Shown here one piece after another: positions 1 through 64,000 of a DNA stretch of 64,000 bases. The translations under genes and the position numbers were made by a program. The stretch lies in the sequence record MT446416.1, one strand, 5' to 3'. The notes beneath the pieces are model-generated. The model did no database searches. It was given only the letters and a program-made list of their open reading frames with translations, and was not told the DNA's origin. Every line of letters starts with the position of its first letter. The stretch's first letter is position 1.

Positions 1-155
1 TGCTTATTTGTACCTAAAAGTATATACATCCATAATTCACTGTAATGTACATCTTGTGTATAAGGGTTGTTGTAACTTTTTGATACTATAACATCAAATT
101 CAGATGCATGAACCCTTGTGAACTTAAGAATATCTTTTTGTGTTATGATTCTCAT
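1..155 (-). CDS. Array A member, partial (runs off window)
   Basis: Hand translation: MRIITQKDILKF...LWMYILLGTNK. Confidence 0.85.
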   Translation of the reverse strand, partial: MRIITQKDILKFTRVHASEFDVIVSKSYNNPYTQDVHYSELWMYILLGTNK

Positions 156-367
156 ATCTTTTCCTGTATAAGCTTCTTAAGAATCTCAATATGTGAATTA
201 ACAGTTCTTTATTGATGTTGTGTTCCTAAGAGTGTCAGTACTATCATCTCTGAACGCAAAAGATTTTTTTCAAGTTCACTGATATCAGTTCTTGTATCAA
301 GTACTAAAAATTCTTGACTATTTTTTCTGAATAATGCCAAGTACTCTTGGTTTGATATTACCTTCAT
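152..367 (-). pseudogene. Array A member with an in-frame TAA
   Basis: MKVISNQEY...LLGTQHQ*RTVNSHIEILKKLIQEKI. TAA at 209-211 replaces the conserved Glu, and ATGA coupling is kept at both ends. Confidence 0.8.
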
Positions 368-594
368 AGTTTATCCCTGATGCCATTTAAAAGTGCTCTA
401 ATATGCTCATTGACAAAACGCTCTTGGGAATCTGTGTCTAGGGTGAGAAGCATTCTTAAATCTGAACTTTTGATATGATATTCTAAATCATTATTTGATT
501 CTTGCATCAGTTTCTGAAAGGATGAGAAGTTTGCTGCCATTAGTTCAATGTATTCTGCTGTTCCTAGGGGTTTGTGTATGTGCTGTCTGTGCAT
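364..594 (-). CDS. Array A member
   Basis: LDTDSQE variant motif. Confidence 0.8.
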   Translation of the reverse strand: MHRQHIHKPLGTAEYIELMAANFSSFQKLMQESNNDLEYHIKSSDLRMLLTLDTDSQERFVNEHIRALLNGIRDKL

Positions 595-806
595 TTTAAT
601 TGTATTACCCTTTTGAGTGTATTAATGTAATTATACACATTGGCTTCTTGATAGTTAGTTCCTAGAGTAGCTTGAACGTAGATTTCATTTAACTTAATAA
701 TTTTATCCGTATCTGGTAGTTTTGATGTGTTAATGGCAAATAACTTCAAAAACAGTCCATTTATGATTGTTCTGTATTCTTCTCCGGTAATGATTCGCAT
801 TTGCAT
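564..806 (-). CDS. Array A member
   Basis: TLGTNYQE. Confidence 0.85.
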   Translation of the reverse strand: MQMRIITGEEYRTIINGLFLKLFAINTSKLPDTDKIIKLNEIYVQATLGTNYQEANVYNYINTLKRVIQLKCTDSTYTNP

Positions 807-1012
807 GTTCTCAGTACTGATTCTTTAAGTTCATTGATGTAGCACTCTACATATTCTTCTTGTAGGTTTGTTCCGATATGTAACAGTACTCTTAAATCTG
901 CTCTCAGTACTTCTTTGTCATCTTCATCTATATCAGACAGTGTTATGTTTAAGAATTTACTTGAACTCTCTATAAGTAATATTACTGAATCACCTTTGCT
1001 TAAAATTTTCAT
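761..1012 (-). CDS. Array A member
   Basis: IGTNLQE. Confidence 0.85.
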   Translation of the reverse strand: MKILSKGDSVILLIESSSKFLNITLSDIDEDDKEVLRADLRVLLHIGTNLQEEYVECYINELKESVLRTCKCESLPEKNTEQS

Positions 1013-1220
1013 AATCTCTTTTTGCTTTCCTCGCCAAAAGGTACATATACGATTCTTCGTATTGTGCTTGGTAGTTTGTGTTTAAGAGTCGAAACAACTT
1101 CTGTTCTGCTAGAACGAGTTGCTTATCTTCATAACAACGATAGCGTATCAACTTTTTGTATTCGATGTTGATTACATCCATTACTATAAGCCTATGTTCA
1201 TCATCAGTCAAGTGTTTCAT
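990..1220 (-). CDS. Array A member
   Basis: LLNTNYQA. Confidence 0.85.
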   Translation of the reverse strand: MKHLTDDEHRLIVMDVINIEYKKLIRYRCYEDKQLVLAEQKLFRLLNTNYQAQYEESYMYLLARKAKRDYENFKQR

Positions 1221-1458
1221 GCTTTTTTCTTTTCCTGATGTTCTTAGTTAAAAGGTATATTAGTTTTCTATTGTATTCTTCCTGATAGTTTGTTCCTAAT
1301 AGTGCAAGAAGTTTTGCTTCAACTAGAGCTAATTGACGTTCTTCAAATGTGTGTTCCAGTATATACTTTGGGTTTGATTTTTTAGCGTAAGCACTATTAG
1401 TTTTCATTACAATCTTATGATATTCATTAACTGTTAGGATTTTTAAATTCTTGAGCAT
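1204..1458 (-). CDS. Array A member
   Basis: LLGTNYQE. Confidence 0.85.
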   Translation of the reverse strand: MLKNLKILTVNEYHKIVMKTNSAYAKKSNPKYILEHTFEERQLALVEAKLLALLGTNYQEEYNRKLIYLLTKNIRKRKKHETLD

Positions 1459-1684
1459 GTATCTTTTCCTTTATAGAGAATTTAAGATATCGAAGCATAC
1501 TTTCAATGTAATACTCTTGTCTGTCAGTTCCAAGAAAGTACATGAGTTGAATGTATAAAACTTCTGCACTCCTTTCGGCATGTGACTTGTTTGTGTCGTT
1601 TGGAAGTTGATTTGTAAGTTTTCTGGATTTAATTAATCGTTCTTTTAACTCATCGTCTGTTAAGTATATCATTTCACTTTTCAT
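1427..1684 (-). CDS. Array A member
   Basis: FLGTDRQE; close paralog of 1894..2130. Confidence 0.85.
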   Translation of the reverse strand: MKSEMIYLTDDELKERLIKSRKLTNQLPNDTNKSHAERSAEVLYIQLMYFLGTDRQEYYIESMLRYLKFSIKEKIHAQEFKNPNS

Positions 1685-1904
1685 TTACTTTTTCCTTAAT
1701 ACTCATTACAAGATGTTCAATCATATTTTGAACCATAAATTCTTGTTTATCAGTTCCAAGAACGTATGGTAGCTTCTGAAACAATACATTCGCAGACATT
1801 TCATATATTGATTGATTTGGAACGAACTTAAGAGTAATGTTATTGGCTTTTAACATCTTCTCTTGAAATTCTTCATTCGTTAAGTATATCATTTCATTTT
1901 GCAT
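1674..1904 (-). CDS. Array A member
   Basis: VLGTDKQE. Confidence 0.85.
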   Translation of the reverse strand: MQNEMIYLTNEEFQEKMLKANNITLKFVPNQSIYEMSANVLFQKLPYVLGTDKQEFMVQNMIEHLVMSIKEKVNEK

Positions 1905-2130
1905 TTACTTTTTCCTTAATAGTAATTTTGAGATATTTAATTATACGTTCAATGTGATACTCTTGTCTATCAGTTCCCAGAAGATATGGTAGTGATTGGA
2001 ATAAAACTTCTGCACTCCTTTCTGCTGGGGTTTGGTTTGTGTTGTGAGGAAGTTTATTTGTAAGTCTTTTGGATTTAGATAGTCTTTCTGATAACTCATC
2101 ATGTGTTAAGTATATCATTTCCTTTTGCAT
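1894..2130 (-). CDS. Array A member
   Basis: LLGTDRQE. Confidence 0.85.
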   Translation of the reverse strand: MQKEMIYLTHDELSERLSKSKRLTNKLPHNTNQTPAERSAEVLFQSLPYLLGTDRQEYHIERIIKYLKITIKEKVNAK

Positions 2131-2358
2131 TTACATTCTCTCATGTGCATTTTGGGTTAAAAGATCAATCCAGATTTCCACATATCGTTGTTGGTGTTGC
2201 GTCCCTAACAGTACACCTAACTTGGCTTCGGACTCTAATATCATTCTGGTTTTGAACGGTAGACTTTGAAATCCTATTGTAGCATCTAATTTGGTAATTG
2301 CATATTTGATTCGGATGAATCTTTCTTGTAATGTGATGTTGATCATTTCACAGTACAC
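2131..2358 (-). CDS. Array A member
   Basis: LLGTQHQQ. Confidence 0.85.
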   Translation of the reverse strand: MYCEMINITLQERFIRIKYAITKLDATIGFQSLPFKTRMILESEAKLGVLLGTQHQQRYVEIWIDLLTQNAHERM

Positions 2359-2600
2359 CTTAGTGGTTGGGTCATTTGATAAAAGTACAGCTTACCTTTG
2401 ATTTCCATTAGTAATTCATTTAATACGCGTTGGACCTCTGGTTCTTGATAGTTTGTCCCTAACAATGCACCCATCTTTAGCTCACGATACATAATCATCT
2501 TCTTACGGTGTTGAATTTCTGGGTTGTGATAGATTTCATTTCGTTTAGTTGAGATTTTAGCCATGCGTTCATGATATTCATCTGAATTTAAATTAATCAT
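2343..2600 (-). CDS. Array A member
   Basis: LLGTNYQE; start moved to MINLNS by comparison with paralogs. Confidence 0.8.
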   Translation of the reverse strand: MINLNSDEYHERMAKISTKRNEIYHNPEIQHRKKMIMYRELKMGALLGTNYQEPEVQRVLNELLMEIKGKLYFYQMTQPLRCTVK

Positions 2601-2838
2601 TTTTATTCTCCAAAGCATCACATTTATTTTCGATACAATTCATGAGTTCTCTAAGATAGTTTTTTACCTTACCTGACTGATAGTTCGTCCCTAGGAAGTT
2701 GCACAACACGGCTTCTATGATTTTGATTTTCCTGATATCAGGCTTCAATTTTTTGTTATTGAAGATTTGAATCCTTATATCTCTGGATGCATTTAAACGT
2801 TTTTGATATTCATGGTAAGTTAAATTAATCATTTTCAT
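2593..2838 (-). CDS. Array A member
   Basis: FLGTNYQS. Confidence 0.85.
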   Translation of the reverse strand: MKMINLTYHEYQKRLNASRDIRIQIFNNKKLKPDIRKIKIIEAVLCNFLGTNYQSGKVKNYLRELMNCIENKCDALENKND

Positions 2839-3053
2839 TTACGTTTAACCTCTCGCTGGAGGGCATCAATTAACATCAGTACAGCATTCTCTTGATAGTT
2901 TGTTCCTAAGAATGAAAGCATCTTTATATCAGACACTAAAATCAACTTCTTTGAGCGTTCAATAATGTTACTATTATAAACGGCGTTACGTGCTGGATAA
3001 GTTTTTGCAAGACGAACATAATATTCATCTTTACTTAAATTAATCATTTGCAT
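2835..3053 (-). CDS. Array A member
   Basis: FLGTNYQE. Confidence 0.85.
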   Translation of the reverse strand: MQMINLSKDEYYVRLAKTYPARNAVYNSNIIERSKKLILVSDIKMLSFLGTNYQENAVLMLIDALQREVKRK

Positions 3054-3262
3054 TTACTTTTAACCTCTTTAATTAGTGCATCAACCCATAGGTCTACATA
3101 CATTTGTTGATAGTTTGTCCCCAATAGTGCACCTACATAGAGTTCAGCTTTCATTGCGTGCTTTAGGTCAATAGGGATGCTCTTATCGTTTGATATCATT
3201 CTCCTTCTGCTGCCACATGTTTTCAGAAGCTTAACATATTCGTAACCTATTAATTTTCTCAT
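3044..3262 (-). CDS. Array A member
   Basis: LLGTNYQQ. Confidence 0.85.
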   Translation of the reverse strand: MRKLIGYEYVKLLKTCGSRRRMISNDKSIPIDLKHAMKAELYVGALLGTNYQQMYVDLWVDALIKEVKSKCK

Positions 3263-3474
3263 TCTTTTGATATCACCTTGTTGCGTAAGGCACTTAACAA
3301 TACGTCAGTGTAGATGTTTTGATAGTTTGTTCCTACGAATACACCCAACTTCATTTCAGCTATTATAACACATTTGTCCTCTTGTGCAATAGACTTGTCT
3401 AAAGAAATACTAACAACTTTCCTTCTTATAGCTTGTAACCTCCAATGATACTGATACTCATTTAGGGTTATCAT
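3259..3474 (-). CDS. Array A member
   Basis: FVGTNYQN. Confidence 0.85.
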   Translation of the reverse strand: MITLNEYQYHWRLQAIRRKVVSISLDKSIAQEDKCVIIAEMKLGVFVGTNYQNIYTDVLLSALRNKVISKE

Positions 3475-3709
3475 TCTCTCGTCTCCATATCTCGGTTCTA
3501 ATGTGTTGGCATTGTGCTTCGATGAACATATCTATTGATTTGGCAATTGCTTTTTTATCAGTGCCTGTCATCAGTACAAGCATCTCGGCCTCACAGTGAA
3601 GTAAACGCATGATATCATAGGGTAATATTTCAGATACCGTGTCATAGTGTTTCTGTGCCAGTGTCTGCAATAGTTTACAATACATTTTGTGGTTCATTCT
3701 TTGTCGCAT
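3458..3709 (-). CDS. Array A member (diverged)
   Basis: MTGTDKK variant. Confidence 0.7.
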   Translation of the reverse strand: MRQRMNHKMYCKLLQTLAQKHYDTVSEILPYDIMRLLHCEAEMLVLMTGTDKKAIAKSIDMFIEAQCQHIRTEIWRRENDNPK

Positions 3710-3945
3710 TGTTTATTCCATTCTTTTTTGGCCTTGGTGGTTTTATATTGGATTTGGTTTCTTAATGCTGATAAGTATCGTTGAATGAACAGATCTTGAT
3801 AGTTTGTCCCAATGAATTTCATAAGATAAACATCACCGTTGATAACATCCACTTCAGGTACACCATGTAATGCATTGTTATTTCTAAGGGTTCTAATAAG
3901 AGAGAACAGGGCAGTTTGATACTCAACTCCTGATAAAATCTTCAT
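3694..3945 (-). CDS. Array A member
   Basis: FIGTNYQD; likely start MKILSG. Confidence 0.8.
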   Translation of the reverse strand: MKILSGVEYQTALFSLIRTLRNNNALHGVPEVDVINGDVYLMKFIGTNYQDLFIQRYLSALRNQIQYKTTKAKKEWNKQCDKE

Positions 3946-4180
3946 ATTTTGCGTGGATGTATTCATCTAGTTTATCCTGTATAACATTCGTTAATTGATC
4001 GATATATTCTGTGCAAAACTTATCTTGATATTGAGTCCCCATAAAGTACAGCAACCATAGCTCATCAACTTTAGCTCGCATTTGGTTCCATGTAAGGGTG
4101 GGGTCATCGTAGACTATCCTTGCGACTGGGGTTAGTTTACGAACTATAGTTTCATATTCATCTTGTGTTAAGCGTCTCAT
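3923..4180 (-). CDS. Array A member
   Basis: FMGTQYQD. Confidence 0.85.
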   Translation of the reverse strand: MRRLTQDEYETIVRKLTPVARIVYDDPTLTWNQMRAKVDELWLLYFMGTQYQDKFCTEYIDQLTNVIQDKLDEYIHAKYEDFIRS

Positions 4181-4401
4181 TTACCTAAATCCCTGACATG
4201 ACATTTTAAGGCCGTGATGTGGTTGTCTACCATAACCTCCTGATAGTTTGTCCCTACAAATGGTATTAATGTTGAGTCTGTTAGTATAACATACTTTTCA
4301 TTGGATGTTAGTGATTCATCATCGTAAACTTGAAGTCTAAAGTTCTTCCCTTGTTCTAATCGTTTAAGATATTCTTGAGTGTTTATGTCTTTCATTTGCA
4401 T
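4177..4401 (-). CDS. Array A member
   Basis: FVGTNYQE. Confidence 0.85.
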   Translation of the reverse strand: MQMKDINTQEYLKRLEQGKNFRLQVYDDESLTSNEKYVILTDSTLIPFVGTNYQEVMVDNHITALKCHVRDLGK

Positions 4402-4610
4402 TTGTCCATAATGTATTTCTTGAGTGCAACTATGTGCTCATGGACATAACTTTCCTGATAGTTTGTCCCCAGTACAGCCATCATGCGTACATCGGTGGTG
4501 TTTATCTTGTGTTCAAATCGTGTTAAGCCTTTTTTTTGTAAAAGGGTATCGTATTTGTTTAATGCATCAATGATAATTCTCATCTTCTCTATATTACTTA
4601 AATGTTTCAT
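4392..4610 (-). CDS. Array A member
   Basis: VLGTNYQE. Confidence 0.85.
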   Translation of the reverse strand: MKHLSNIEKMRIIIDALNKYDTLLQKKGLTRFEHKINTTDVRMMAVLGTNYQESYVHEHIVALKKYIMDKCK

Positions 4611-4822
4611 ATTTTGTTTCTATGGTGCTCCATGAGTGTTTCTGTGTAGTTCTTCATGAATTTATCTTGAAACTGTGTCCCGATGAATTGTAAGACCCAT
4701 AGTGCATATATTCGTTCTTCCTTGTCCACCAAAGATAAATGTATATTATTATAAATCCTTTGTTCTTTATCTAGGGTAGACAGTACACGAGCCTCGTATT
4801 CACCTTGTGTTATTTTAATCAT
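4607..4822 (-). CDS. Array A member
   Basis: FIGTQFQD. Confidence 0.85.
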   Translation of the reverse strand: MIKITQGEYEARVLSTLDKEQRIYNNIHLSLVDKEERIYALWVLQFIGTQFQDKFMKNYTETLMEHHRNKI

Positions 4823-5034
4823 AGTTTGCTCTTAATGTATTTCTTGAGTGCATTTATATACACATTCAAGAAATGCTCCTGATAGTCTGTTCCCAAGAAT
4901 GCACCCAATAGTATATCATTTTCCAATACCTCGGCTAAGTTTAAATCAGAAGTCTCTTCATATACTATGAGGATTTCAAGTTGTCTGGCAGCAACGCGTT
5001 CGGTATATTGATGTGAGTTTGTAATGATATTCAT
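4819..5034 (-). CDS. Array A member
   Basis: FLGTDYQE, ends KSKL. Confidence 0.85.
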   Translation of the reverse strand: MNIITNSHQYTERVAARQLEILIVYEETSDLNLAEVLENDILLGAFLGTDYQEHFLNVYINALKKYIKSKL

Positions 5035-5242
5035 AGTTTACTCTTAATGTGGTTCTTGAGTGCAAATAAGTATTCCCCTACATAATACTCCTGAAAGTCT
5101 GTATCCAAAAATGCACCCATGAGTAAATCCTTCTCCATTGCCCTTGATAAGTTAAGGTCTACGCTTGAAAGGTATATCAGTAAGATTTCAGCCTGTGCCG
5201 AATTGAAACGTATCTTATATTCTTCTGGTGTTAAAAAATCAT
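5031..5242 (-). pseudogene. Array A member frameshifted in a homopolymer
   Basis: Reads ATG ATT TTT TAA. One more T in the run at 5233-5238 gives MIFLTPEEY...FLDTDFQE...KSKL, a close paralog of 4819..5034. Confidence 0.8.
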
Positions 5243-5445
5243 AGTTTACTCTTTATATCTTTTATTAAATGTAAAATCCAATCATTAACAAAACTTTCTT
5301 GGAAGTTGGTTCCCAGTCCAGCCATCATCCACCACTCCGATAGAATAAACTTTTTTTCATCCCTAGATAACTCATCTGGTATATATATATTCTTTCTATA
5401 TTCGATCATAAGATTATATAGTTGAAATTGTGTGATAATTTTCAT
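5239..5445 (-). CDS. Array A member
   Basis: GLGTNFQE, ends KSKL. Confidence 0.85.
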   Translation of the reverse strand: MKIITQFQLYNLMIEYRKNIYIPDELSRDEKKFILSEWWMMAGLGTNFQESFVNDWILHLIKDIKSKL

Positions 5446-5639
5446 AGTTTACCCGTTATATCTTCAATTAAATATGAAATCCAATCCTTGACATACCTTT
5501 CCTGAAAGTTAGTTCCAATGAATAGTGCCATAACCAATTCACGCTTATAGGCCATACCACGTTCATGTGACTTATACATTATCATAGCCATGTTATTGAT
5601 AAGTCTTTCGTGATGTTCTGCTTGAGTTAAAATACGCAT
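5442..5639 (-). CDS. Array A member (first in operon)
   Basis: FIGTNFQE; GGAG RBS. Confidence 0.85.
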   Translation of the reverse strand: MRILTQAEHHERLINNMAMIMYKSHERGMAYKRELVMALFIGTNFQERYVKDWISYLIEDITGKL

Positions 5640-5665
5640 AGGGACTCCATTAAAAATAATATCAA

Positions 5666-5698
5666 TCCTATAATATACGATTCGTATAAAAAGTCAAT
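5666..5698 (-). promoter_or_regulatory. sigma70-like promoter for array A, with a 15-bp palindrome in the spacer
   Basis: TTGACT-16-TATTAT on the - strand; TATACGA-T-TCGTATA at 5674-5688. Confidence 0.7.
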
Positions 5699-5888
5699 AA
5701 CATTTTATTAGTAATACCCCTTTATCGAAGTCGCTAAGGTTACCCGCAGTTTAGCCCCCTACGCATTTTGCCATAGTCCAATCCCTTTTTATTCATAAAA
5801 GTCAAGGGATTACCTATGCATTTTTTTAACGCTGAAGTTTAAAAATGCCTTGACTTTTTTATGATTCAGTACTAAATCCTTTTACGCA

Positions 5889-6098
5889 TTAATCCTTCGT
5901 TACGCTTACGATTATCTGTGTATCCCCATAGTCCTGCCATACTTCCACGCCAGCCGCCGACCTGGTTAGTCGTGCTGTCATCTGCTTAATGGTCTTAGGC
6001 TTTAGTGGAACCTGTTGCAGTACTGTACGCATGGCACTATCGACGTTATCATGTACGCCTGCAATAGTACCTAGAACGCTGTATACTGTATAGATCAT
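5889..6098 (-). CDS. Hypothetical early protein
   Basis: ORF with a GGAG RBS. Confidence 0.7.
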   Translation of the reverse strand: MIYTVYSVLGTIAGVHDNVDSAMRTVLQQVPLKPKTIKQMTARLTRSAAGVEVWQDYGDTQIIVSVTKD

Positions 6099-6166
6099 GT
6101 GTATGTACTCCTGATATAGTTAAGGCCGCTACAAGGCGGCCTATGATGTTTGATGATGTGTAACGC

Positions 6167-6568
6167 TTACAACCCTAAGATAGTACGTGCTTCGTTACGT
6201 TCCTTAGTTTGCTGCATGATGTAAGCTAACTGGTCCTTGCTAATGTATCCCTTGTCCATAGCTTCACGGATAGATACATCATAAGCACCGAACCCCGTGC
6301 GAACGATACGCACATCATTCAGGTTAGTGTTATATATACCGCCGAGATCAACGGATTCGAATACTGCATCAACTGTATATTCGTTGTTACCGTCATTGAA
6401 GTTTTCAATCTCAATATTACGGGACACGGCCCAACGTTTACAGCTACCGATAATGCGGCAATATTCCGGTTGCATATGACCATTACTTACAGCGTGCTCA
6501 AGGCCAGCTTTACCAAAAGTCCGGGCCAGTACTAAAACGTCAGCGTAAGAAGTGATAGTGAAAGTCAT
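6167..6568 (-). CDS. Hypothetical early protein
   Basis: Start corrected to MTFTITSY (AGGAG RBS); the track extension is promoter/leader sequence. Confidence 0.75.
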   Translation of the reverse strand: MTFTITSYADVLVLARTFGKAGLEHAVSNGHMQPEYCRIIGSCKRWAVSRNIEIENFNDGNNEYTVDAVFESVDLGGIYNTNLNDVRIVRTGFGAYDVSIREAMDKGYISKDQLAYIMQQTKERNEARTILGL

Positions 6569-6657
6569 GATGATACTCCTTAAGTTAGGAGGGAGAACCA
6601 TTTCCCCCTCTCTATGTAAAACATTATACATGAATCTAAGTACTATGCAAGTACTTT

Positions 6658-6990
6658 TTACATTTTAATACCTGGATTCAGGTAGCGGTGAGATCCATAC
6701 TCTGGGTAGGTTTCAGTCCAGTACTGTAAATCTATAGTACCTTTAGCGTTAATCTTGTCTACCAGCTTATTCATCTTAGCGTATACTACATTAGCATCGA
6801 TGCGTTTAAAGCCAGTGGCTTTAGTGAAGTAGTAGTGATTTGCTTCACTATCATTAAGGATATACCGAGCACCGTTTGCCGTTTGTGCAATAATGATTGA
6901 GTATTCTACTTCCCGATCCAGTCCGTCAATGAATACAGATGAAACATTAGTACGGATGAAAGCGTTTACGATAGCGATTGAAGTACTCAT
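6658..6990 (-). CDS. Hypothetical early protein
   Basis: ORF with RBS and its own promoter (~7044-7072). Confidence 0.75.
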   Translation of the reverse strand: MSTSIAIVNAFIRTNVSSVFIDGLDREVEYSIIIAQTANGARYILNDSEANHYYFTKATGFKRIDANVVYAKMNKLVDKINAKGTIDLQYWTETYPEYGSHRYLNPGIKM

Positions 6991-7149
6991 TTTGAATCTC
7001 CTAACTTTGTGGGCCGTCGCACCATTGCCGCCCTACGAGATACATTATTGCAGTACTGCTATACTTTGTCAATAGTTTTTTATTAATAGTTTTAGTACTG
7101 GCAGTACATCCACCAGCAGATAGTTACTCACCGTTATTAACTATATATT

Positions 7150-7240
7150 TTAGATACACCTATGCACCCGGTGGGCTAGTTTTTGTCTATGCGTATATAA
7201 TAGCAAAGGGACTTACCGGAGTCAATCCCTTTTTTATTCT
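7150..7240 (-). ncRNA. Small-RNA-like unit, family 1 (RCCC-AYN-GGGUGC), copy 1
   Basis: TTGACT(7220-25)-17-TATTAT(7197-7202), then GCCCACCGGGTGCATAGGTGTATCTA; no RBS or ORF. Confidence 0.5.
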
Positions 7241-7242
7241 TT

Positions 7243-7500
7243 TTATGAAATATCTTCGATGTAGTCGGCCCATTTCATTTTTTCAGTACTGTCAATGGCT
7301 ACCGGATTATTTGGATCAAACCATTCACCATTACCGCAATACATACCCACGGCTACGGTTTTATAGCCATCCTGTGCCGTATTCCATGACATTGCACGAT
7401 AGATATGGCCTTTAATTGGTGTTAGTACTGGTAACGTTTTATGGTCTTCTACGTAGGCCATAGCTTGAGGATTTACCCGATATTGTGTGAACTGTTCCAT
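7243..7500 (-). CDS. Hypothetical early protein
   Basis: ORF with its own promoter. Confidence 0.75.
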   Translation of the reverse strand: MEQFTQYRVNPQAMAYVEDHKTLPVLTPIKGHIYRAMSWNTAQDGYKTVAVGMYCGNGEWFDPNNPVAIDSTEKMKWADYIEDIS

Positions 7501-7576
7501 TATGTTTCCCCTTGTAGTTAGTAAAGTTATTACATCAGTACTATCAAGCTATGTCAATAGTACTGAAATAAAACTT

Positions 7577-7801
7577 TTAGATTAGATTATTGATACCTTC
7601 GATGGTAGACTCGCTTTCTTCTTTCTCCCATTGTCGGTAGTACTTCCATGTTTCATGATATGTGGCGATTAGTTCATCTTTTTGATCCTGGTTACATGCC
7701 AGTACTGAATCACGGTGAGCGGTGTTATAGATAGAATCGAATGATTTCTTCTCTTCTGCCAGGTTAGCTACTTCCCGCATCAGTTCATCAAAGTTAGCCA
7801 T
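7577..7801 (-). CDS. Hypothetical acidic early protein
   Basis: ORF with an AGGAG RBS. Confidence 0.75.
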   Translation of the reverse strand: MANFDELMREVANLAEEKKSFDSIYNTAHRDSVLACNQDQKDELIATYHETWKYYRQWEKEESESTIEGINNLI

Positions 7802-7868
7802 TTTAATACTCCTTTTAGTGGGGGAGGATATCTCCCCCTATGCAAAACATTATACGCTTTATTCAGTA

Positions 7869-8132
7869 CTATGCAAGTACTTTTTTCATATAAACATTAA
7901 ATTCTACACCGCCGTAACCTTCCACGATGATATGTTTTGCGTTATCACGCTTGCACATAGTGAAACCGTTGTTGATATGTTCTGCATTTTCCAGGGCTAC
8001 ATCACCGATAGCGGCACATACAGCACTAATAACAGTATTCCGCAAAGTACTGGTATCATTAGCGGTCATAGTAGTTTGCAGTACTACGTTGTCATATACG
8101 TGTGCATTGATAGTGATTTCAATAGCGTTCAT
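7869..8132 (-). CDS. Hypothetical early protein
   Basis: Start corrected to MNAIEIT (AGGAG RBS). Confidence 0.75.
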   Translation of the reverse strand: MNAIEITINAHVYDNVVLQTTMTANDTSTLRNTVISAVCAAIGDVALENAEHINNGFTMCKRDNAKHIIVEGYGGVEFNVYMKKVLA

Positions 8133-8253
8133 GGTGTATCTCCTGGACTTGAGGGGAAACCATTTCCCCCTCTCGATGTAAAACATTATACGCGAATTGC
8201 GATAGTATGCAAGTACTTTTTTAAAATAGTTTTCAGTACTGAATACTTATATA

Positions 8254-8340
8254 ATAGATACATTTATGCACCCGGTGGGTTAGATTGTTTTCATGCATAT
8301 ATAATAGCAAAGGGACTGACCTGAGTCAATCCATTTTTTT
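8254..8340 (-). ncRNA. Small-RNA-like unit, family 1, copy 2
   Basis: TTGACT...TATTAT promoter, then ACCCACCGGGTGCATAAATGTATCTA; no ORF. Confidence 0.5.
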
Positions 8341-8348
8341 AATCTTTT

Positions 8349-8933
8349 TTATCGTGTTATAGTTACGGCTTTTACATCACGCTTTTTATAGTACTGATTC
8401 CAGATATTGCGGGTTAAACCGTAATCAAGTACTTTAATCAAGCCGTTACGATCCTGGCCGATATTCTGTTTTCTGATATCTCTTATAGTTAGTGTTGATA
8501 AGGTATCATCAACGTGTTGTAGTGCATCAGCAAAGCGGTGCTGGCGTTCAATGGTATTACGTTTAATATTGCACTTTAATTCGTTGCACGCGTTAACGTG
8601 CTTTACGCTGCCTTTGCTTGCAGTACTCAAACGATCCATAACAATAAACATATTATCAGGATCGCTTAAATGCATATGCACCTTAGCAAAGTACTGTTTC
8701 ATTTGAGGGCGGTCATAATCTAAAAAATTCCATACCTTACATTCAGTTTCATTTTGTTCTACACCCGCATCACAATTCGCGACCTTGATCACTAACCGAT
8801 CATTTAAAGCGAATACTATACGGGAAGAACCCGCACCGATGATCTCAAGACCAGCTAACCGACAAGCTGAAAGGATCTCTTTGTTGGTTTCCATTTCTGA
8901 CAGTGTACGGATAAATTTAGTATAATTACGCAT
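8349..8933 (-). CDS. Protein kinase-like (ePK/APH fold) protein
   Basis: IGAGSSRIV glycine loop, VIK lysine, NETE helix-C Glu, DIRKQN catalytic loop and LDYG; start MRNYTK. Confidence 0.75.
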   Translation of the reverse strand: MRNYTKFIRTLSEMETNKEILSACRLAGLEIIGAGSSRIVFALNDRLVIKVANCDAGVEQNETECKVWNFLDYDRPQMKQYFAKVHMHLSDPDNMFIVMDRLSTASKGSVKHVNACNELKCNIKRNTIERQHRFADALQHVDDTLSTLTIRDIRKQNIGQDRNGLIKVLDYGLTRNIWNQYYKKRDVKAVTITR

Positions 8934-8980
8934 TGCATTTACTCCTTGAATTGATGAAACTATATTACAGTACTTTACTA

Positions 8981-9208
8981 TCAATGGCAACTACTTTTTT
9001 TAACATTAACGGCGTGGATCACTTCCTTAGTGTTTTTAGTACTGAATACTTTTGCCGCTCCTTGTTCGACCGTGATGCGATAGCGACCATTAACATCAAC
9101 CATATTAATAAAGTCCGGCGTGCTGAATGGTGTTGTTTTACATTTCAGTACGGTTAACAGTTCCACCAGCGATGTAGTTTATTTGATACGTTTTTCTAAA
9201 GTAATCAT
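8981..9208 (-). pseudogene. Early gene interrupted by an in-frame TAA at codon 10
   Basis: ATG at 9208 with a GGGG RBS reads MITLEKRIK*TTSLVELL..., TAA at 9179-9181, in frame with track ORF 8981..9166. Confidence 0.55.
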
Positions 9209-9262
9209 TTTGTTTTCCCCCGTGTTGGTATATATACATAGTACTAAAACATTTGAGTACTG

Positions 9263-9517
9263 TCAACGTGAAATTCTTTTAATAGCAGTATTATACTGCT
9301 GGTGCTCATACAAACTAATTTTACCAGTACTCTCGATAACGATTCTATTGTTAGTGTCTACATCGATAACACGCAGTTTACCGTTGCTTAACTTCCTAGG
9401 TAATATGTTACCATTAATAAACTCATTAGCAAGCTGTACGGCCTTTGTGATGATTCTCTGAGGGGCTTTATAGTGTACCCGCAAGATATTATCTTTAGAT
9501 AGTTGTACCTTAATCAT
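9263..9517 (-). CDS. Hypothetical early protein
   Basis: ORF with RBS. Confidence 0.7.
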   Translation of the reverse strand: MIKVQLSKDNILRVHYKAPQRIITKAVQLANEFINGNILPRKLSNGKLRVIDVDTNNRIVIESTGKISLYEHQQYNTAIKRISR

Positions 9518-9579
9518 TTTAGTTTATCCTATAAAAAAAGCGGGAACTGATCCCGCCGTGTTGTTAGTACTGCTAGGTA

Positions 9580-9984
9580 TTAGATAACCTGTCGGCGTTT
9601 ACTGAATACAGTAACACTGTTTCCCTTGCGGTCGTGGCGGATCTCTCGTTGGTTGCGAATCAGTACACTTGGACGCTTCAAGTTAGCCAGATGATCCGCG
9701 TGAGTCCATGCATTCGAATTTACGGAAACTTTAATATCAGAACCCGCGACGAATTCATCTTGAGCGTTAAGAATTGCCGCCAGTTCTTCAGCTTGTTTTT
9801 GTTCTGCTGCTGTCAGTACTGGCTCAGGTGAATTCACAATATCAGAGATTTCTTTGAACTGTACGGCCCAGCGTTGGCCTTTCGGTGCATCTTTGCCCAT
9901 GTCTTTAAATAGCTCACCTTCCTCGCGTGCAACAATACGGGCAGCTTCACGGGTAGCGTAGAATTTAGTAATCATGGTATACAT
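9580..9984 (-). CDS. Hypothetical early protein, paralog of 21493..21756
   Basis: Shared TRE.AR..AR, FKDMG, RWAV and HDRKGN.VTV. Confidence 0.8.
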   Translation of the reverse strand: MYTMITKFYATREAARIVAREEGELFKDMGKDAPKGQRWAVQFKEISDIVNSPEPVLTAAEQKQAEELAAILNAQDEFVAGSDIKVSVNSNAWTHADHLANLKRPSVLIRNQREIRHDRKGNSVTVFSKRRQVI

Positions 9985-10070
9985 CCTATTAGTTAAGTTA
10001 GTACTACAAGCGAGAGTCTATTATAAAGTACTATCTGTGTAATGTCAAATAGTACTTTAAATGGATTCTA

Positions 10071-10394
10071 TTACATGTCTTTCTTACGTTTTACATCGTA
10101 GTAGCGAACTGTTATTTCTTTGTTAATCTCTTTTTCGATGCGGTGAATAACTTTTTCTTTCGGGTTGAAACCTATAACGGTTTCTTTAATGATCTCCAAA
10201 CCAGTGTATTCGCCTTGCGTACCGTAACCGTATGTAAAGGTTTCGTGTCCCAGGTCTTCCCAGCGGTCGCCAATTAACGCAGACACGTAGCAAGAGTGGT
10301 AAGTATTGCCGTTCCGATCAGTCCAGCGATTAACTTTAATGTCAAAGGAGGTTACAATTTTCAGTTCTACTTTCTGGGTAAGGATCATAGCCAT
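10071..10394 (-). CDS. Hypothetical early protein, paralog of 16639..16983
   Basis: Shared RW...GNTY.S, F.YGYG and DVKRKKD. Confidence 0.8.
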   Translation of the reverse strand: MAMILTQKVELKIVTSFDIKVNRWTDRNGNTYHSCYVSALIGDRWEDLGHETFTYGYGTQGEYTGLEIIKETVIGFNPKEKVIHRIEKEINKEITVRYYDVKRKKDM

Positions 10395-11062: not shown

Positions 11063-11071
11063 TAATTATTT

Positions 11072-62057: not shown

Positions 62058-62365
62058 TAACGAACCTCCACTTCTTGAGAAAGAGCATGAGTCAGTGCAT
62101 TTGAATTCGAACCATTCATTTCATGCTGACATACAAACATAATGGCATCTTGTACTGAACCTGCGATTTCATACTCACGACCTTCAGGATCAGTTACCAG
62201 GTGTTCAACGATGCAACCACCACTAAGTACAGAAGCACCAGTACTTACACTAATTCTGTAACCTAAAAAATCAAACTGCATACATGCGTCAGTAGGTTTC
62301 ATCCAATAACCGCTGTTTTGATTCAAATCGATGATTACAAAACCTTGAGTGTTAGTTTGAAACAT
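62057..62365 (-). CDS. Hypothetical protein
   Basis: GAGG RBS; own promoter at ~62459-62487. Confidence 0.75.
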   Translation of the reverse strand: MFQTNTQGFVIIDLNQNSGYWMKPTDACMQFDFLGYRISVSTGASVLSGGCIVEHLVTDPEGREYEIAGSVQDAIMFVCQHEMNGSNSNALTHALSQEVEVR

Positions 62366-62394
62366 AGTTAATTCCTCATTTAATTTAAAAGGGC

Positions 62395-62446
62395 GGGAAC
62401 GCAGTGACGAGTACGATTATGCTGTCTTTCCTTTCACTGCATTCCC
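62395..62446 (-). promoter_or_regulatory. 13-bp-stem 5' leader hairpin
   Basis: GGGAAUGCAGUGA...UCACUGCGUUCCC with a G-U pair and a 26-nt loop. Confidence 0.6.
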
Positions 62447-62582
62447 TTTGATATAAACATTATACAGTACTGATATCTTATGTCAAGTATTAATCACCAA
62501 AAATCATCAGATACCCAAACCAACCCACACAGACGACTAAGCTAACAATACCAAAGACAATCTCTAAAGTCATGTTGCATCC

Positions 62583-62975
62583 TTAATCAAGGATTTTATA
62601 TTCAATATGACCAAAGTATCCAGCCTCAAGGATGCGATTACCATCAGCATCTTCCAAATCCCACCCACGGGATGTTTCGGCAATAATAGTCATGATGTGA
62701 CCTTTAGTGAAGGTTCCACTCATAGTGGATACATCCTCAAGTAATTGAACCTTCTTACCAACATTTGTATTTGATTTAAACATACTTTACCCTTATTCGT
62801 TGATTACGTCAAGTACTTTGTCCAGTTTCTTACCAATACTATCCTTTGGTTTCTCACCATTCTGGAATACATTAGTACTGCAATACTCAGGACGGGTATT
62901 AGGGAACTTCTCGTTCATCCAGGAGTGACCATATACACCAAGAATGATACCTACGATAAGAATGATGATTTGCAT
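62583..62975 (-). CDS. Two small proteins (62583..62783; 62793..62975 with an N-terminal TM segment)
   Basis: ORF track. Confidence 0.65.
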
Positions 62976-62989
62976 GATATATCCTCTAA

Positions 62990-63784
62990 TTAAATTACAT
63001 ACGGTTTATAGTAATGAATCTCGTTTGCGATTGCAGTGAAGACTTTATTATTAAATCTTTCACCATAATCACGAAGTGATTCACCTTCTTCGCTTTCAAT
63101 GAAGTAATTATATACTGGTAGACGTGCGTTGTCAACACCTATAAATGATTTCATGTAAATTTGTACTAAACGATTCATTCCTTCATTTAAGCATTGCACC
63201 TCAAAGTGCTTGATACCTTTGTCTAAATGTTTGAATGCATTAATGATACCACGTTTAAAATCACGCTGCATAGTACTGAATAAATTCTCAGGGAACACGG
63301 TAATAGGTGACATTGATTTAAGAATGTATGTATCTTTGGCATTCTTAATGTACTCAATAAAGCAGTAGTTAACGTCCGGCTCAATTGAACGATCCGCGTT
63401 ATGATACCAGTGTTTAAACTCACTGTACTCAGCAAACTTATGCTGGCGTAATGCGTTACAATCCTCACACAGTGCAGTTATGTTCTCTTTATCATTACCG
63501 CCCTGGAGACAGTCCAGTACATTATGGTCTAACGTCATGCGTACAAGGCGTTTACCTTTAAGTACATAAGGTCTGAATTTATAACGGTCTTTAGTACTGT
63601 GCTTATGTAAAGTGAATACCACATTGGATTCACCACAACAATCACATTTAAAGCCATCACGTGACATTACATGAATGAGTTTTCGAGTATTTGGGCCGAA
63701 CTCAGATTTAGTAATGTTGCCGACAATTTCTGATGGGTCGTAGTATTTTGAATTCCGGCGAATCAATTCATCTATAGTGCTCAT
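62990..63784 (-). CDS. HNH-domain protein
   Basis: RDGFKCDCCG...TLDH......GGND..NITALCEDCN. Confidence 0.75.
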   Translation of the reverse strand: MSTIDELIRRNSKYYDPSEIVGNITKSEFGPNTRKLIHVMSRDGFKCDCCGESNVVFTLHKHSTKDRYKFRPYVLKGKRLVRMTLDHNVLDCLQGGNDKENITALCEDCNALRQHKFAEYSEFKHWYHNADRSIEPDVNYCFIEYIKNAKDTYILKSMSPITVFPENLFSTMQRDFKRGIINAFKHLDKGIKHFEVQCLNEGMNRLVQIYMKSFIGVDNARLPVYNYFIESEEGESLRDYGERFNNKVFTAIANEIHYYKPYVI

Positions 63785-63799
63785 TTTACATTAATCCTT

Positions 63800-64000
63800 C
63801 TATGCTACAACCAATAAGTACTTTTTTCACTTCAATAACTCGTACCAAATAGAATCCATTTGAAAAGTTAAAACTATACATTTGTACTAAGGCATCTGCT
63901 TCAGATTTCGCACGGATACATGATAGATATAGTTCTCGTATATCGCCATCCAACGATGCTTGTTTCTCGTCATTGATAACAATAGAACGAATCTCAAAAC
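63800..64000 (-). CDS. Partial hypothetical protein (starts beyond window)
   Basis: Open frame ...CIRAKSEADALVQMY...LVVA*. Confidence 0.6.

What the first reader, a model, noticed from the sequence alone, without database searches (positions are those of the whole stretch)
1..64000. Window-wide over-representation of the palindrome AGTACT (often CAGTACTG)
Seen: 9 copies in 22600-23180 and 7 in coding 24600-25120, against about 0.2 expected per 600 bp at ~33% GC. The site occurs inside genes (read as ST, VL or xY), in the -35/-10 spacer or at the -35 edge of most promoters, in the RCC1 terminator stems, and as a 13-bp tandem array. Established: lytic phages usually avoid 6-bp palindromes. Inference: this is a functional DNA code, such as a binding site for a phage nucleoid or regulator protein, a modification target, or a self-recognition, packaging or ejection mark.
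Basis: partly seen in the sequence, partly recalled or inferred. Interest (0 to 1): 0.72.

Follow-up and report, generated by a model that had tools for sequence, protein, structure and literature searches.

The report
Hyper-abundant AGTACT palindrome in jumbo phages
A whole lineage of giant bacterial viruses has packed its DNA with the six-letter palindrome AGTACT, about nine times more often than chance and roughly forty times more densely than a sample of its host's DNA; natural selection keeps the sites, which also sit inside the virus's earliest gene switches, so some still-unknown factor must read them.

Summary
AGTACT occurs 266 times in the window against 21 ± 4 expected. It occurs 917 times against about 104 expected in the near-identical whole genome (Escherichia virus TH47, a Rak2/121Q-like jumbo phage).

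The excess survives codon-aware shuffling (189 coding sites against 56 ± 6) and uses all three reading frames. About half of all Ser-Thr dipeptides are spelled AGT-ACT. Sites are conserved against phage 121Q more than their own flanks (78% against 60%).

Seven sampled Rak2-like phages (four named genera and three unassigned) carry 1.9–3.2 sites per kb, including one on Xanthomonas. Four more distant jumbo phages and an E. coli sample have 0.07 per kb or less. The trait therefore follows the phage clade, not the host.

There are two tiers. A baseline of about 2.3 sites per kb runs throughout the genome. Density rises to 6.6–8.8 per kb in the 18.5-kb direct terminal repeat (window ~5740–24245) and the adjacent early genes. 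There, 27 of 30 σ70-type promoters carry the site at fixed positions.

Mobile genes and tandem paralogue arrays lack sites.

Most likely the motif (best form TTCAGTACTGAA) is read by a phage-encoded dyad-symmetric DNA-binding factor. A HIP1-like methylation target is the main rival. I found no published description.

The parts
1..64000 (.). 266 dispersed AGTACT sites (consensus C-AGTACT-G, best form TTCAGTACTGAA), in genes in all three frames and in intergenic DNA
5740..24245 (-). Direct terminal repeat (DTR) of the genome, carrying small early genes on the minus strand. High-density tier: 123 sites, 6.65/kb (coding 5.3/kb, non-coding 9.7/kb)
   Evidence: Mapped from the annotated DTR of phage vB_Ec-M-J; densities
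24246..28700 (-). Small early-type genes on the other side of the terminus (right end of the unique genome): 39 sites, 8.75/kb; Ser-Thr dipeptides at 15.6 per 1000 aa against Thr-Ser at 2.6
22522..24587 (.). Gene-free terminus region of about 2 kb with 22 sites (about 12/kb), many as the 12-bp palindrome TTCAGTACTGAA. The physical genome end of relatives maps to about 24245
22654..22708 (.). Tandem array of four sites with a 13-bp period (CAGTACTATCWTT x4), just upstream of the first DTR promoter
23853..23880 (-). Class A early promoter TTGACA-N9-AGTACT-G-TATAAT (site one base upstream of the -10 box). Same layout at 14196-14223, 13884-13911, 13550-13577, 10451-10478 and 10020-10048, several with a second site 20-23 bp upstream abutting the -35
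   Evidence: identical layout in RaK2
22118..22145 (-). Promoter with the site overlapping the last base of the -35 box (TTGAC|AGTACT); same at 12439-12466
   Evidence: same layout in GAP32
22560..22612 (-). Class B early promoter cassette aaaaAGTAC|TTGCAt-N16-gTATAAT (site overlaps the first T of the -35). 13 copies in the DTR, with sites at 6649, 7875, 8211, 10933, 11469, 15187, 17056, 17377, 19229, 20126, 20927, 21483 and 22604
31105..31135 (+). Terminator hairpin gCCAGTACT..TACTGGc after an RCC1-like gene. Similar hairpins near 29862, 32300, 34701, 35908/35916 and 37795/37806
907..5867 (-). Site-free stretch of 4.96 kb: a tandem array of about 20 small paralogous genes just inside the DTR boundary (Ser-Thr spelled AGTACT only 19% in the arrays)
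43794..46129 (-). Site-free stretch of 2.3 kb containing a 507-aa zinc-ribbon homing-endonuclease-like gene (44004-45527) found at more than 60% identity only in TH47
18215..18775 (-). HNH/NUMOD4 homing endonuclease gene inside the DTR, lying in a site-free gap of about 1 kb (17938-18925)

Best explanation
AGTACT (preferred form C-AGTACT-G, strongest form TTCAGTACTGAA) is the recognition site of a sequence-specific, two-fold-symmetric factor that acts on duplex DNA. The factor is encoded by the Rak2-like phage clade itself and is most likely a homodimeric DNA-binding protein.

It would work on two levels. (1) In the roughly 18.5-kb terminal repeat, which carries the small early genes under near-consensus sigma70 promoters, sites sit one base upstream of the -10 box and/or overlap either edge of the -35 box, often as pairs 20-23 bp apart. 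Occupancy would then gate, most likely shut off, early transcription. (2) About 800 further sites lie scattered through the rest of the genome at about 2.3/kb, roughly 40 times the density of a host DNA sample. These would let the same factor distinguish and load onto phage DNA. Each site would add a small benefit, so selection has filled about half of all synonymous opportunities and has even raised the frequency of Ser-Thr and Val-Leu dipeptides. Recently acquired or fast-duplicating DNA has not yet gained sites.

Shown: the enrichment, its independence of coding, purifying selection on sites, clade-specific distribution, the two density tiers and the fixed promoter positions.

For: DNA-level and dyad-symmetric: all frames are used, flank preferences are symmetric (C at -1 and G at +6, both 46-47%; T at -3 and A at +8), although about 85% of genes are on one strand. 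The 12-mer TTCAGTACTGAA occurs 20 times, which by my rough estimate is about four times the independent-flank expectation, and dominates the non-coding terminus region.

Selection: 189 coding sites against 55.9 ± 6.3 after synonymous shuffling. 51%, 45% and 39% of permissive positions are used in the three frames; Ser-Thr is at 1.53x while Thr-Ser is at 0.98x. Site hexamers are 77.8% conserved against 121Q, local flank hexamers 59.5%, p = 3e-6. One-mismatch neighbours are not depleted.

Density rather than position: only 22-37% of sites are shared at the same codon across genera, yet 62-79% of conserved Ser-Thr dipeptides are AGTACT in each genome, and co-occurrence is close to independent. 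Usage of permissive positions is spatially near-random.

Operator-like placement: 27 of 30 DTR gene-strand promoters carry the site. Genome-wide offsets are discrete (18 at -7/-8 from the -10 box, 5 overlapping the -35 end, 8 at its upstream edge, none elsewhere in the spacer). Promoter-embedded sites are 97.2% identical to 121Q, against 92.3% for the -35, 94.2% for the -10 and 84.5% for the rest of the spacer. Pairs at 20-23 bp: 26 against 10.8 expected. A 4 x 13-bp array lies upstream of the first DTR promoter. The same TTGACA-N9-AGTACTG-TATAAT layout, with divergent spacers, occurs 8 times in a RaK2-length contig, inside a zone with 6.5 sites/kb. GAP32 uses the same -35-overlap layouts.

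Phage-encoded rather than host: the motif is present in Xanthomonas phage XaC1 (96 against 10.9) as well as in six phages of Enterobacterales. It is absent from PA5oct, Atu_ph07, XacN1 and Phosso.

Discriminating power: 0.06/kb in an E. coli K-12 sample against 2.6/kb in the phage.
Against: No reader has been identified. The larger DTR proteins have no recognisable DNA-binding domain. GAP32's HTH_19 protein is absent from TH47. The one small winged-helix candidate I traced also has a weak homologue in Phosso, which lacks the motif.

Nearly all the information is in the 6-bp core; flanks add only about 0.3-0.5 bits at position ±1. That looks as much like a methylase or nuclease site as like an operator.

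Most sites are solitary and lie inside genes, where no regulatory role is evident.

The promoter cassettes are partly paralogous, with conserved leaders. The fixed offsets are therefore not independent events and could reflect ancestry plus a general advantage of keeping any existing site.

A PF05869 adenine methylase co-occurs with the motif.

There are no experimental data on binding, modification or promoter effects.
Confidence: 0.42

Rival explanations
1. Modification target, HIP1-like. AGTACT is the target of a phage-encoded DNA-modifying enzyme, with the conserved 174-aa PF05869 adenine methylase as the obvious candidate. The methylated site would be the functional mark. For example, it could distinguish incoming or packaged (fully methylated) DNA from newly replicated DNA at early promoters, or serve as a chemical self-mark read by other factors.
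For: Cyanobacterial highly iterated palindromes behave the same way: hyper-abundant, in all frames, conserved by selection. Their abundance correlates with a cognate orphan methylase (PMC5861425, PMC4390886).

The information sits in a sharp 6-bp palindrome, typical of type II methylases.

A syntenic PF05869 adenine methylase orthologue is present in every motif-bearing lineage listed, including Xanthomonas phages XaC1 and XbC2. No DNA methylase is mentioned for PA5oct or XacN1, and Atu_ph07 has a different one.

The Dam/Dcm-type methylation reported for RaK2 DNA could come from host enzymes, which would leave the phage adenine methylase without an assigned target.
Against: Characterised members of the PF05869 'Dam' family are, to my knowledge, GATC-specific (from memory, not tested here).

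Many clade-specific genes share the same distribution, so the correlation is weak.

There is no deamination signature: AGTATT/AATACT is neither enriched nor depleted relative to other neighbours (1.42x), and only 3 of 32 lost sites changed to it. This argues only against m5C.

The clade's C5-methylase is linked to CpG methylation in RaK2.

Methylation alone does not explain why more sites would be better, so a reader would still be needed.

No published digest used ScaI.
Confidence: 0.25
2. Cis-acting site for DNA-processing machinery. AGTACT would be a Chi-like attenuator of a phage-encoded helicase-nuclease, or a preferred site of a phage nickase, homing-type endonuclease or T4-type topoisomerase II (A|GTAC|T would give a 4-base stagger). 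It would promote recombination-dependent replication and concatemer formation, or protect phage DNA while host DNA is degraded.
For: Density is highest on both sides of the genome terminus (6.6-8.8/kb against 2.3/kb), where ends are exposed and where terminal repeats must recombine.

The benefit looks additive and position-independent, as for Chi.

The contrast with host DNA is about 40-fold.

The clade encodes RecB-like exonuclease, UvsX/UvsW, topoisomerase II and many HNH endonucleases.
Against: This does not explain the fixed positions in promoters, or why embedded sites are more conserved than the -35 and -10 boxes.

Known Chi-type signals are asymmetric and read on one strand.

Cleavage hot spots tend to be lost by gene conversion rather than gained (established knowledge).

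The phage already carries canonical Chi at about 8 times expectation, clustered and oriented in the DTR, so protection from host RecBCD does not need AGTACT.
Confidence: 0.12
3. A host protein reads the site. The candidate is the nucleoid-occlusion factor SlmA, whose 12-bp binding site GTGAGTACTCAC has AGTACT at its centre. The phage would recruit or titrate it, for example to block cell division.
For: The SlmA site contains the hexamer (PMC3020112). Six of the seven motif-bearing phages sampled infect Enterobacterales.
Against: There are no SBS-like sites (GTRAGYRCTYAC) in 352 kb. The position where SlmA needs a purine is C in 46-51% of sites and G in only 7-8%. SBS-type half flanks are, if anything, depleted (27 against about 48 expected).

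The motif is equally enriched in Xanthomonas phage XaC1, so it follows the phage clade and not the host order.
Confidence: 0.04
4. Non-adaptive origin: a by-product of codon or dipeptide usage, a mutational bias, or a repair-driven molecular drive of the very-short-patch type.
For: The codons AGT, ACT, GTA and TAC are all common in this AT-rich genome. Elhai proposed a repair-drive model for HIP1.
Against: The excess survives synonymous shuffling by about 21 SD and is present in non-coding DNA at up to 10/kb.

One-mismatch neighbours are not depleted, as a conversion drive would require.

Sites diverge more slowly than their flanks.

Related AT-rich jumbo phages (PA5oct at 32.7% GC) have fewer sites than chance.
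Confidence: 0.03

Closest known systems
HIP1, the highly iterated palindrome GCGATCGC of cyanobacteria (and alternate HIPs)
   Same: A short palindrome many-fold over-represented across a whole genome. It occurs inside genes in all frames as well as between them. It is conserved between related genomes beyond background, implying selection. Its function has long been unknown. It is associated with orphan methylases, and is absent or replaced in some related lineages.
   Different: HIP1 is a GC-rich octamer in cellular chromosomes. This motif is an AT-rich hexamer in lytic jumbo phages. HIP1 showed no link to gene regulation, whereas AGTACT sits at fixed positions in early promoters and is concentrated three- to four-fold around the genome terminus. 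HIP1 shows 10-90 kb periodicity, while here the usage of permissive positions is near-random. No cognate methylase has been shown here.
Operators of dimeric phage repressors, and genome-wide repressor sites such as mycobacteriophage L5 'stoperators' or phage P1 C1 operators (from general knowledge)
   Same: A short site repeated many times along a phage genome. The sites overlap core promoter elements and come in pairs roughly two helical turns apart, consistent with promoter occlusion.
   Different: Stoperators and C1 operators are asymmetric, number in the tens, are mostly intergenic and belong to temperate phages. Here there are about 900 palindromic sites, 85% of them inside genes, in a virulent phage. 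No binding protein is known.
Self-marking over-represented words of bacterial chromosomes: Chi, DNA uptake sequences (DUS/USS), and SlmA and Noc binding sites (from general knowledge; SlmA and Noc sites from PMC3020112)
   Same: Genome-wide words that let a protein machine tell 'own' DNA from other DNA. Their benefit grows with copy number. They occur in coding DNA and bias peptide content. Uptake sequences, like AGTACT here, often pair up to form terminator stems.
   Different: Chi and DUS/USS are asymmetric, and their readers are known (RecBCD and the uptake machinery). The SlmA site shares the AGTACT core, but its flanks are not those enriched here.
ScaI-type restriction-modification target (AGTACT)
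   Same: Identical 6-bp palindrome. Methylases with this specificity exist; for example, giant-virus methylomes list AGTACT among methylase targets.
   Different: Restriction targets are normally avoided by phages, not accumulated nine-fold. No ScaI-like nuclease or matching methylase has been identified in these phages.

Membership tests
Highly iterated palindrome (HIP-type genome-wide motif) | A short palindrome over-represented many-fold across the whole genome | tested here: met
   917 against 104 expected in 352 kb; every 5-kb bin but one carries sites; 7.6-11x in baseline samples of six other phages
Highly iterated palindrome (HIP-type genome-wide motif) | Occurs within ORFs in all frames and between ORFs; not a peptide or RNA motif | tested here: met
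   Frames 382/259/147 genome-wide; symmetric flanks; present in non-transcribed promoter spacers
Highly iterated palindrome (HIP-type genome-wide motif) | Sites conserved between related genomes beyond background (selection, not replenishment) | tested here: met
   77.8% against 59.5% for local control hexamers, p = 3e-6; neighbours not depleted
Highly iterated palindrome (HIP-type genome-wide motif) | A cognate orphan methylase is present when the motif is abundant | tested here: inconclusive
   The PF05869 adenine methylase co-occurs with the motif, but its specificity is unknown and many other genes share the same distribution
SlmA-binding site (SBS) | 12-bp palindrome GTGAGTACTCAC with G1, T2, A4, G5 required and a purine at position 3 | tested here: not met
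   No GTRAGYRCTYAC in 352 kb; position 3 is C in 46-51% and G in 7-8% of sites
SlmA-binding site (SBS) | Confined to phages of hosts that have SlmA | tested here: not met
   Equally enriched in Xanthomonas phage XaC1. That Xanthomonas lacks SlmA is from memory and was not tested
Operator of a dimeric transcriptional regulator | Dyad-symmetric site overlapping core promoter elements at fixed positions | tested here: met
   Offsets -7/-8 from the -10 box and both edges of the -35 box; 27 of 30 DTR promoters
Operator of a dimeric transcriptional regulator | Site conserved relative to surrounding non-functional promoter DNA, also across genera | tested here: met
   97.2% against 84.5% for the rest of the spacer; the site is invariant in RaK2 promoters with divergent spacers
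Operator of a dimeric transcriptional regulator | A cognate DNA-binding protein that binds the site and changes transcription | not testable with these tools
   No candidate could be tied to the motif
Chi-like recombination or anti-nuclease signal | Asymmetric word with orientation bias relative to DNA ends or replication | tested here: not met
   The motif is a palindrome. The canonical Chi word is separately enriched and oriented in the DTR
Type II restriction-modification or methylase target (ScaI type) | The base in the site is modified in phage DNA | not testable with these tools
   Published digests did not include ScaI; the RaK2 methylation data are not shown in that paper
Repeat-element family (MITE-like or REP-like) | Copies share extended flanking sequence | tested here: not met
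   Flanks beyond ±3 carry no information. Only the 13 class B promoter cassettes share longer context

The most novel reading that the evidence does not exclude
Rak2-like jumbo phages have no nucleus-like shell and no wholesale base substitution. They may instead mark their 350-kb genomes as 'self' purely by sequence. An AGTACT density about 40 times that of the host would be read by a phage factor. That factor would time the shut-off of the terminal-repeat early promoters. It would also direct protection, replication or recombination, or packaging functions to phage DNA rather than host DNA. This would be a third strategy for self/non-self discrimination in large phages, beside chemical DNA modification (T4) and physical compartmentation (phiKZ-like).
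Probability: 0.25. Interest if true: 0.85.

Novelty: new variant of a known kind. Interest (0 to 1): 0.7.

Why it matters
If a factor reads about 900 sites per genome strongly enough for selection to reshape codon choice and even dipeptide content across at least four named genera and several unassigned lineages, it is probably central to how these very large, poorly understood phages run their infection.

- It would give an experimental handle on early-gene timing in Rak2-like phages, where 80% of genes have no known function.
- It offers a tractable model for the 30-year-old question of what highly iterated palindromes do. A virulent coliphage with a laboratory host is far easier to recode and assay than a cyanobacterial chromosome.
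- AGTACT density is a simple, alignment-free signature for recognising this clade in metagenomes. It also flags recently acquired DNA (homing endonucleases, paralogue arrays) within these genomes.
- ScaI would cut these genomes into about 900 fragments unless the site is modified, which makes the first test very cheap.

Tried and rejected
1. Codon or amino-acid artefact: rejected by synonymous and codon-order shuffles and by the non-coding densities.

2. VSP-like repair drive: one-mismatch neighbours are not depleted (1.2-2.0x) and there is no C-to-T signature.

3. Host SlmA site: the core matches but the flanks do not; there are no SBS-like sites; the motif is also present in a Xanthomonas phage.

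4. Host-order explanation (Enterobacterales only): rejected by XaC1.

5. Candidate readers from annotation. GAP32 HTH_19 protein, GAP32 rV5-type N6A methylase and RaK2 Mom-like protein are all absent from TH47. The C5-methylase (PF00145) is conserved but linked to CpG methylation in RaK2. The 72-aa winged-helix protein is present in all motif-bearing lineages but also, weakly, in motif-free Phosso. The ten largest DTR proteins have no DNA-binding domain in Pfam or PHROGs.

6. Known RNA families in 5-29 kb: none.

7. Regular spacing or large-scale clustering of sites in the baseline genome: not found (CV 0.98 against a null of 1.04 ± 0.04).

8. Extended -10 explanation for the spacer site: only the -8 offset would create TGnTATAAT, and the commoner -7 offset does not.

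9. Literature: no paper in the library couples AGTACT with these phages or with phage over-representation. The RaK2, CBB, Sharanji and fEgEco12 papers do not mention it, and no published digest used ScaI.

10. A T4 control was started but only 3 kb was fetched. I dropped it because PA5oct already serves as the AT-rich control.

Full report
**What the window is.** The window is 99.7% identical to Escherichia virus TH47 (MT446416.1, positions 81726-145725). TH47 is a 352-kb Rak2/121Q-like jumbo myovirus of the genus Asteriusvirus. It has 35.7% GC, no N runs and no tRNA genes.

AGTACT occurs 266 times against 21.3 ± 4.4 in dinucleotide-preserving shuffles.
- It is the most over-represented hexamer, at 12.3 times the order-1 expectation. 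It is the only strongly enriched palindrome. Several other palindromes are avoided in the usual phage manner: GGATCC 0.18x, GGTACC 0 against 8.1, CGTACG 0 against 5.5.
- The flanks are symmetric: C at -1 in 47% of sites and G at +6 in 47%, with weaker T at -3/-4 and A at +8/+9. CAGTACTG accounts for 67 of the 266 sites.

**It is not a coding artefact.** I used a simple ORF model (145 genes, 85% coding, 124 on the minus strand).
- 188 sites are coding and 76 intergenic, and the three frames are used 77/45/66 times.
- Shuffling synonymous codons within genes gives 55.9 ± 6.3 sites against 189 observed. Shuffling codon order gives 24.5.
- Genome-wide, 51% of all Ser-Thr dipeptides are spelled AGT-ACT, against about 15% expected from codon usage. 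In the other two frames, 45% and 39% of permissive positions are used.
- The motif has even shaped proteins. Ser-Thr occurs at 1.53 times expectation while Thr-Ser is at 0.98. Val-Leu is at 1.34 while Leu-Val is at 0.96.

**It is under selection.** I aligned the window to phage 121Q (87% identity over 24.5 kb).
- 77.8% of AGTACT hexamers are fully conserved, against 59.5% of hexamers in their own flanks (p = 3e-6).
- Per-base identity peaks over the motif, at 92.6% against 87.6%.
- One-mismatch neighbours are not depleted (1.2-2.0 times expectation) and there is no deamination signature. A repair-conversion drive is therefore unlikely.

**It is a trait of a phage clade, not of a host.** The whole TH47 genome has 917 sites against 104 expected, in every region. 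Baseline samples of other lineages are notably uniform:

| Genome (sample) | AGTACT observed | Expected |
|---|---|---|
| RaK2 (Alcyoneusvirus) | 114 | 10.8 |
| GAP32 (Mimasvirus), first sample | 114 | 14.2 |
| GAP32 (Mimasvirus), second sample | 141 | 12.5 |
| Yersinia phage fHe-Yen9-04 (Eneladusvirus) | 58 | 6.7 |
| Salmonella phage Munch | 66 | 8.7 |
| Xanthomonas phage XaC1 | 96 | 10.9 |
| PA5oct | 3 | 14.3 |
| Atu_ph07 | 2 | 5.3 |
| XacN1 | 0 | 7.3 |
| Phosso | 2 | 3.5 |
| E. coli K-12, 50-kb sample | 3 | 4.8 |

- The motif-bearing samples all lie at 1.9-3.2 sites per kb. The more distant jumbo relatives and the host sample lie at 0.07 per kb or less.
- The XaC1 result matters because its host is outside Enterobacterales. 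It argues against a host-specific reader.
- None of the motif-free relatives has a substitute hyper-abundant palindrome.

**Number of sites matters more than position.** In 38-46 orthologue pairs between TH47 and RaK2 or GAP32 (59-64% amino-acid identity), only 22-37% of sites sit at the same codon and frame. Yet 62-79% of conserved Ser-Thr dipeptides are AGTACT in each genome, and their co-occurrence is close to independent (20 against 16.2 expected; 11 against 10.3). Within the baseline genome, the choice among 1460 permissive positions is spatially close to random. This is the pattern expected if each site adds a small, additive benefit.

**There are two tiers of density, and the hot zone is the terminal repeat.**
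- The annotated 21.5-kb direct terminal repeat (DTR) of phage vB_Ec-M-J begins at a physical genome end. That end maps to window position ~24245, at a hairpin. The repeat ends at window ~5740. fEgEco12 has a comparable experimentally supported repeat of 20,993 bp.
- Density is 6.65/kb in the DTR (coding 5.3, non-coding 9.7). It is 8.75/kb in the 4.4 kb of small genes on the other side of the terminus. It is about 2.3/kb in both coding and non-coding DNA elsewhere.
- RaK2 has an equivalent zone, with 72 sites in 11 kb.

**DNA that lacks sites.**
- The two longest site-free stretches in the genome, 8.4 kb and 5.0 kb (the latter at window 907-5867), are tandem arrays of paralogous small genes. 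There, Ser-Thr is spelled AGTACT only 19% of the time.
- Further gaps contain a GIY-YIG endonuclease, a LAGLIDADG insert, zinc-ribbon endonuclease-like genes (window 44004-45527, unique to TH47 above 60% identity) and an HNH gene inside the DTR (18215-18775).
- Older homing endonucleases in RaK2 do carry sites.
- New or fast-turning-over DNA is therefore poor in sites, consistent with slow accumulation under selection.

**Promoters.** The DTR carries near-consensus sigma70 promoters on the gene strand, and 27 of 30 contain AGTACT.
- Class A is TTGACA-N9-AGTACT-G-TATAAT, often with a second site abutting or overlapping the upstream edge of the -35 box 20-23 bp away.
- A variant has the site overlapping the last base of the -35 box (TTGAC|AGTACT).
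- Class B is a 13-copy cassette, aaaaAGTAC|TTGCAt-N16-gTATAAT, with a conserved leader.
- Among 117 strict promoter matches genome-wide, sites start at -7/-8 from the -10 box (18 cases), at -17/-18 (5) or at -27 to -31 (8). None fall elsewhere in the spacer. This layout accounts for the excess of site pairs at 20-23 bp (26 against 10.8).
- In 26 promoters that align to 121Q, embedded sites are 97.2% identical. That compares with 92.3% for the -35 box, 94.2% for the -10 box and 84.5% for the rest of the spacer.
- The exact class A pattern occurs 8 times in a RaK2-length IMG/VR contig, with unrelated spacer sequences. It occurs 11 times in a 121Q-length contig. GAP32 uses the same -35-overlap layouts.
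- A 4 x 13-bp array of sites lies just upstream of the first DTR promoter. In the gene-free terminus region of about 2 kb, the motif expands to TTCAGTACTGAA.
- Caveat: the cassettes are partly paralogous, so the fixed offsets are fewer independent events than they appear.

**Who reads it?** This remains unknown.
- SlmA is excluded on flank preferences and on the XaC1 result.
- The larger DTR proteins show no DNA-binding domain.
- GAP32's HTH_19 protein, GAP32's rV5-type methylase and RaK2's Mom-like protein are not shared with TH47. An RpoD-like sigma factor is shared.
- The clade has a C5-methylase (PF00145) and a small adenine methylase (PF05869). The latter is a syntenic orthologue in every motif-bearing lineage listed, including XaC1 and XbC2.
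- The RaK2 paper reports Dam/Dcm/CpG-type methylation as data not shown. The Dam/Dcm part could be due to the host, so the adenine methylase's target is open.
- No published digest used ScaI.
- The fEgEco12 annotation lists several small winged-helix or HTH candidates. The one I traced (72 aa, TH47 219888-220106) is present in all motif-bearing lineages. It also has a weak homologue in motif-free Phosso.

**Interpretation.**
- I favour a phage-encoded, dyad-symmetric DNA-binding factor that gates the early promoters of the terminal repeat and uses the dispersed sites as a genome-wide self-mark (confidence about 0.4).
- The main rival is a HIP1-like methylation target (about 0.25).
- A DNA-processing site of the Chi, nickase or topoisomerase kind is third (about 0.12). 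It fits the concentration near the ends but not the promoter positions, and canonical Chi is already enriched and oriented in the DTR.
- Host-factor and non-adaptive explanations are largely excluded.

**Comparison with what is known.** The closest precedent is the cyanobacterial highly iterated palindrome HIP1. It too is hyper-abundant, found in all frames, selectively conserved, of unknown function and associated with methylases. This case differs in four ways. It occurs in virulent phages. The site is embedded in promoters. The sites are concentrated at the genome termini. No cognate methylase has been shown. I found no publication describing the motif in these phages, so I rate it a new variant of a known kind.

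Noticed in passing
window 5740-24245; terminus near 24245: The window spans a collapsed direct terminal repeat. The physical genome end annotated in relative vB_Ec-M-J maps to about 24245, at a hairpin (24226-24244). The inner repeat boundary maps to about 5740. TH47 is deposited as a 352-kb record with no feature annotation; I saw no second repeat copy in it but did not test for one.
   Followed up: yes
window 24158-24190 and 24376-24430; 23343-23494: Ten-bp repeats TGATTACTTW flank the mapped terminus on both sides. A block with an 8-bp period (about 14 units, CGTCTAGC/CATCCAGC-like) lies 0.8 kb inside it. These are candidate terminase or replication recognition elements, distinct from AGTACT.
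   Followed up: no
window 7110, 9163, 10965, 11865, 12824, 13333, 17444, 23649 (CCACCAGC); 17506, 23661 (GCTGGTGG): The E. coli Chi octamer is about 8-fold over-represented in the genome (23 copies against 2.7 expected). Eight copies in one orientation cluster in the terminal repeat. By my reading of Chi polarity, that orientation would stop RecBCD entering from the right genome end. An inverted Chi pair (ccaccagcttgtgctggtgg, 23649-23668) lies 0.6 kb from the terminus.
   Followed up: partly
window 1-5640 (and TH47 71.8-80.2 kb, outside the window): Two tandem arrays of paralogous genes of unknown function: about 20 genes of 65-92 aa here, and about 19 genes of 130-212 aa upstream. Both are almost free of AGTACT, which suggests recent expansion.
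   Followed up: partly
window 44004-45527 (-) and 18215-18775 (-): A 507-aa zinc-ribbon/treble-clef homing-endonuclease-like gene found at more than 60% identity only in TH47, and an HNH/NUMOD4 endonuclease inside the terminal repeat. Both lie in site-free DNA.
   Followed up: yes
window 28731-37785 (+): Seven paralogous genes of 369-416 aa, annotated in 121Q as RCC1-like 'regulator of chromosome condensation'. Each is followed by a conserved promoter-like and Shine-Dalgarno module, and most by a CCAGTACT...TACTGG terminator hairpin. They are the only long plus-strand block in the window.
   Followed up: partly
window 22919-22972 and 23135-23188 (+): Two copies of a 54-nt element (76% identical), each downstream of a plus-strand promoter-like site in the gene-free terminus region and antisense to the early genes. 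These are possible small RNAs; there is no Rfam match.
   Followed up: partly
whole window / TH47 genome: Classical restriction-site avoidance coexists with the AGTACT excess: GGTACC 0 against 8.1 and CGTACG 0 against 5.5 in the window, and GATC 0.54x and GGCC 0.52x genome-wide.
   Followed up: no
window 8349-8990 (-): A 213-aa DTR protein with weak, sub-threshold Pfam matches to protein kinase domains (E about 2e-3). It is a possible early host-takeover kinase.
   Followed up: no
L024, L030, L031 (IMG/VR contigs of 15-35 kb, 42% GC): Three unrelated small viral contigs share one identical promoter, TTGACA-N9-AGTACTG-TATAAT, with conserved flanks but no genome-wide AGTACT enrichment. This may be chance or a transferred promoter cassette.
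   Followed up: no
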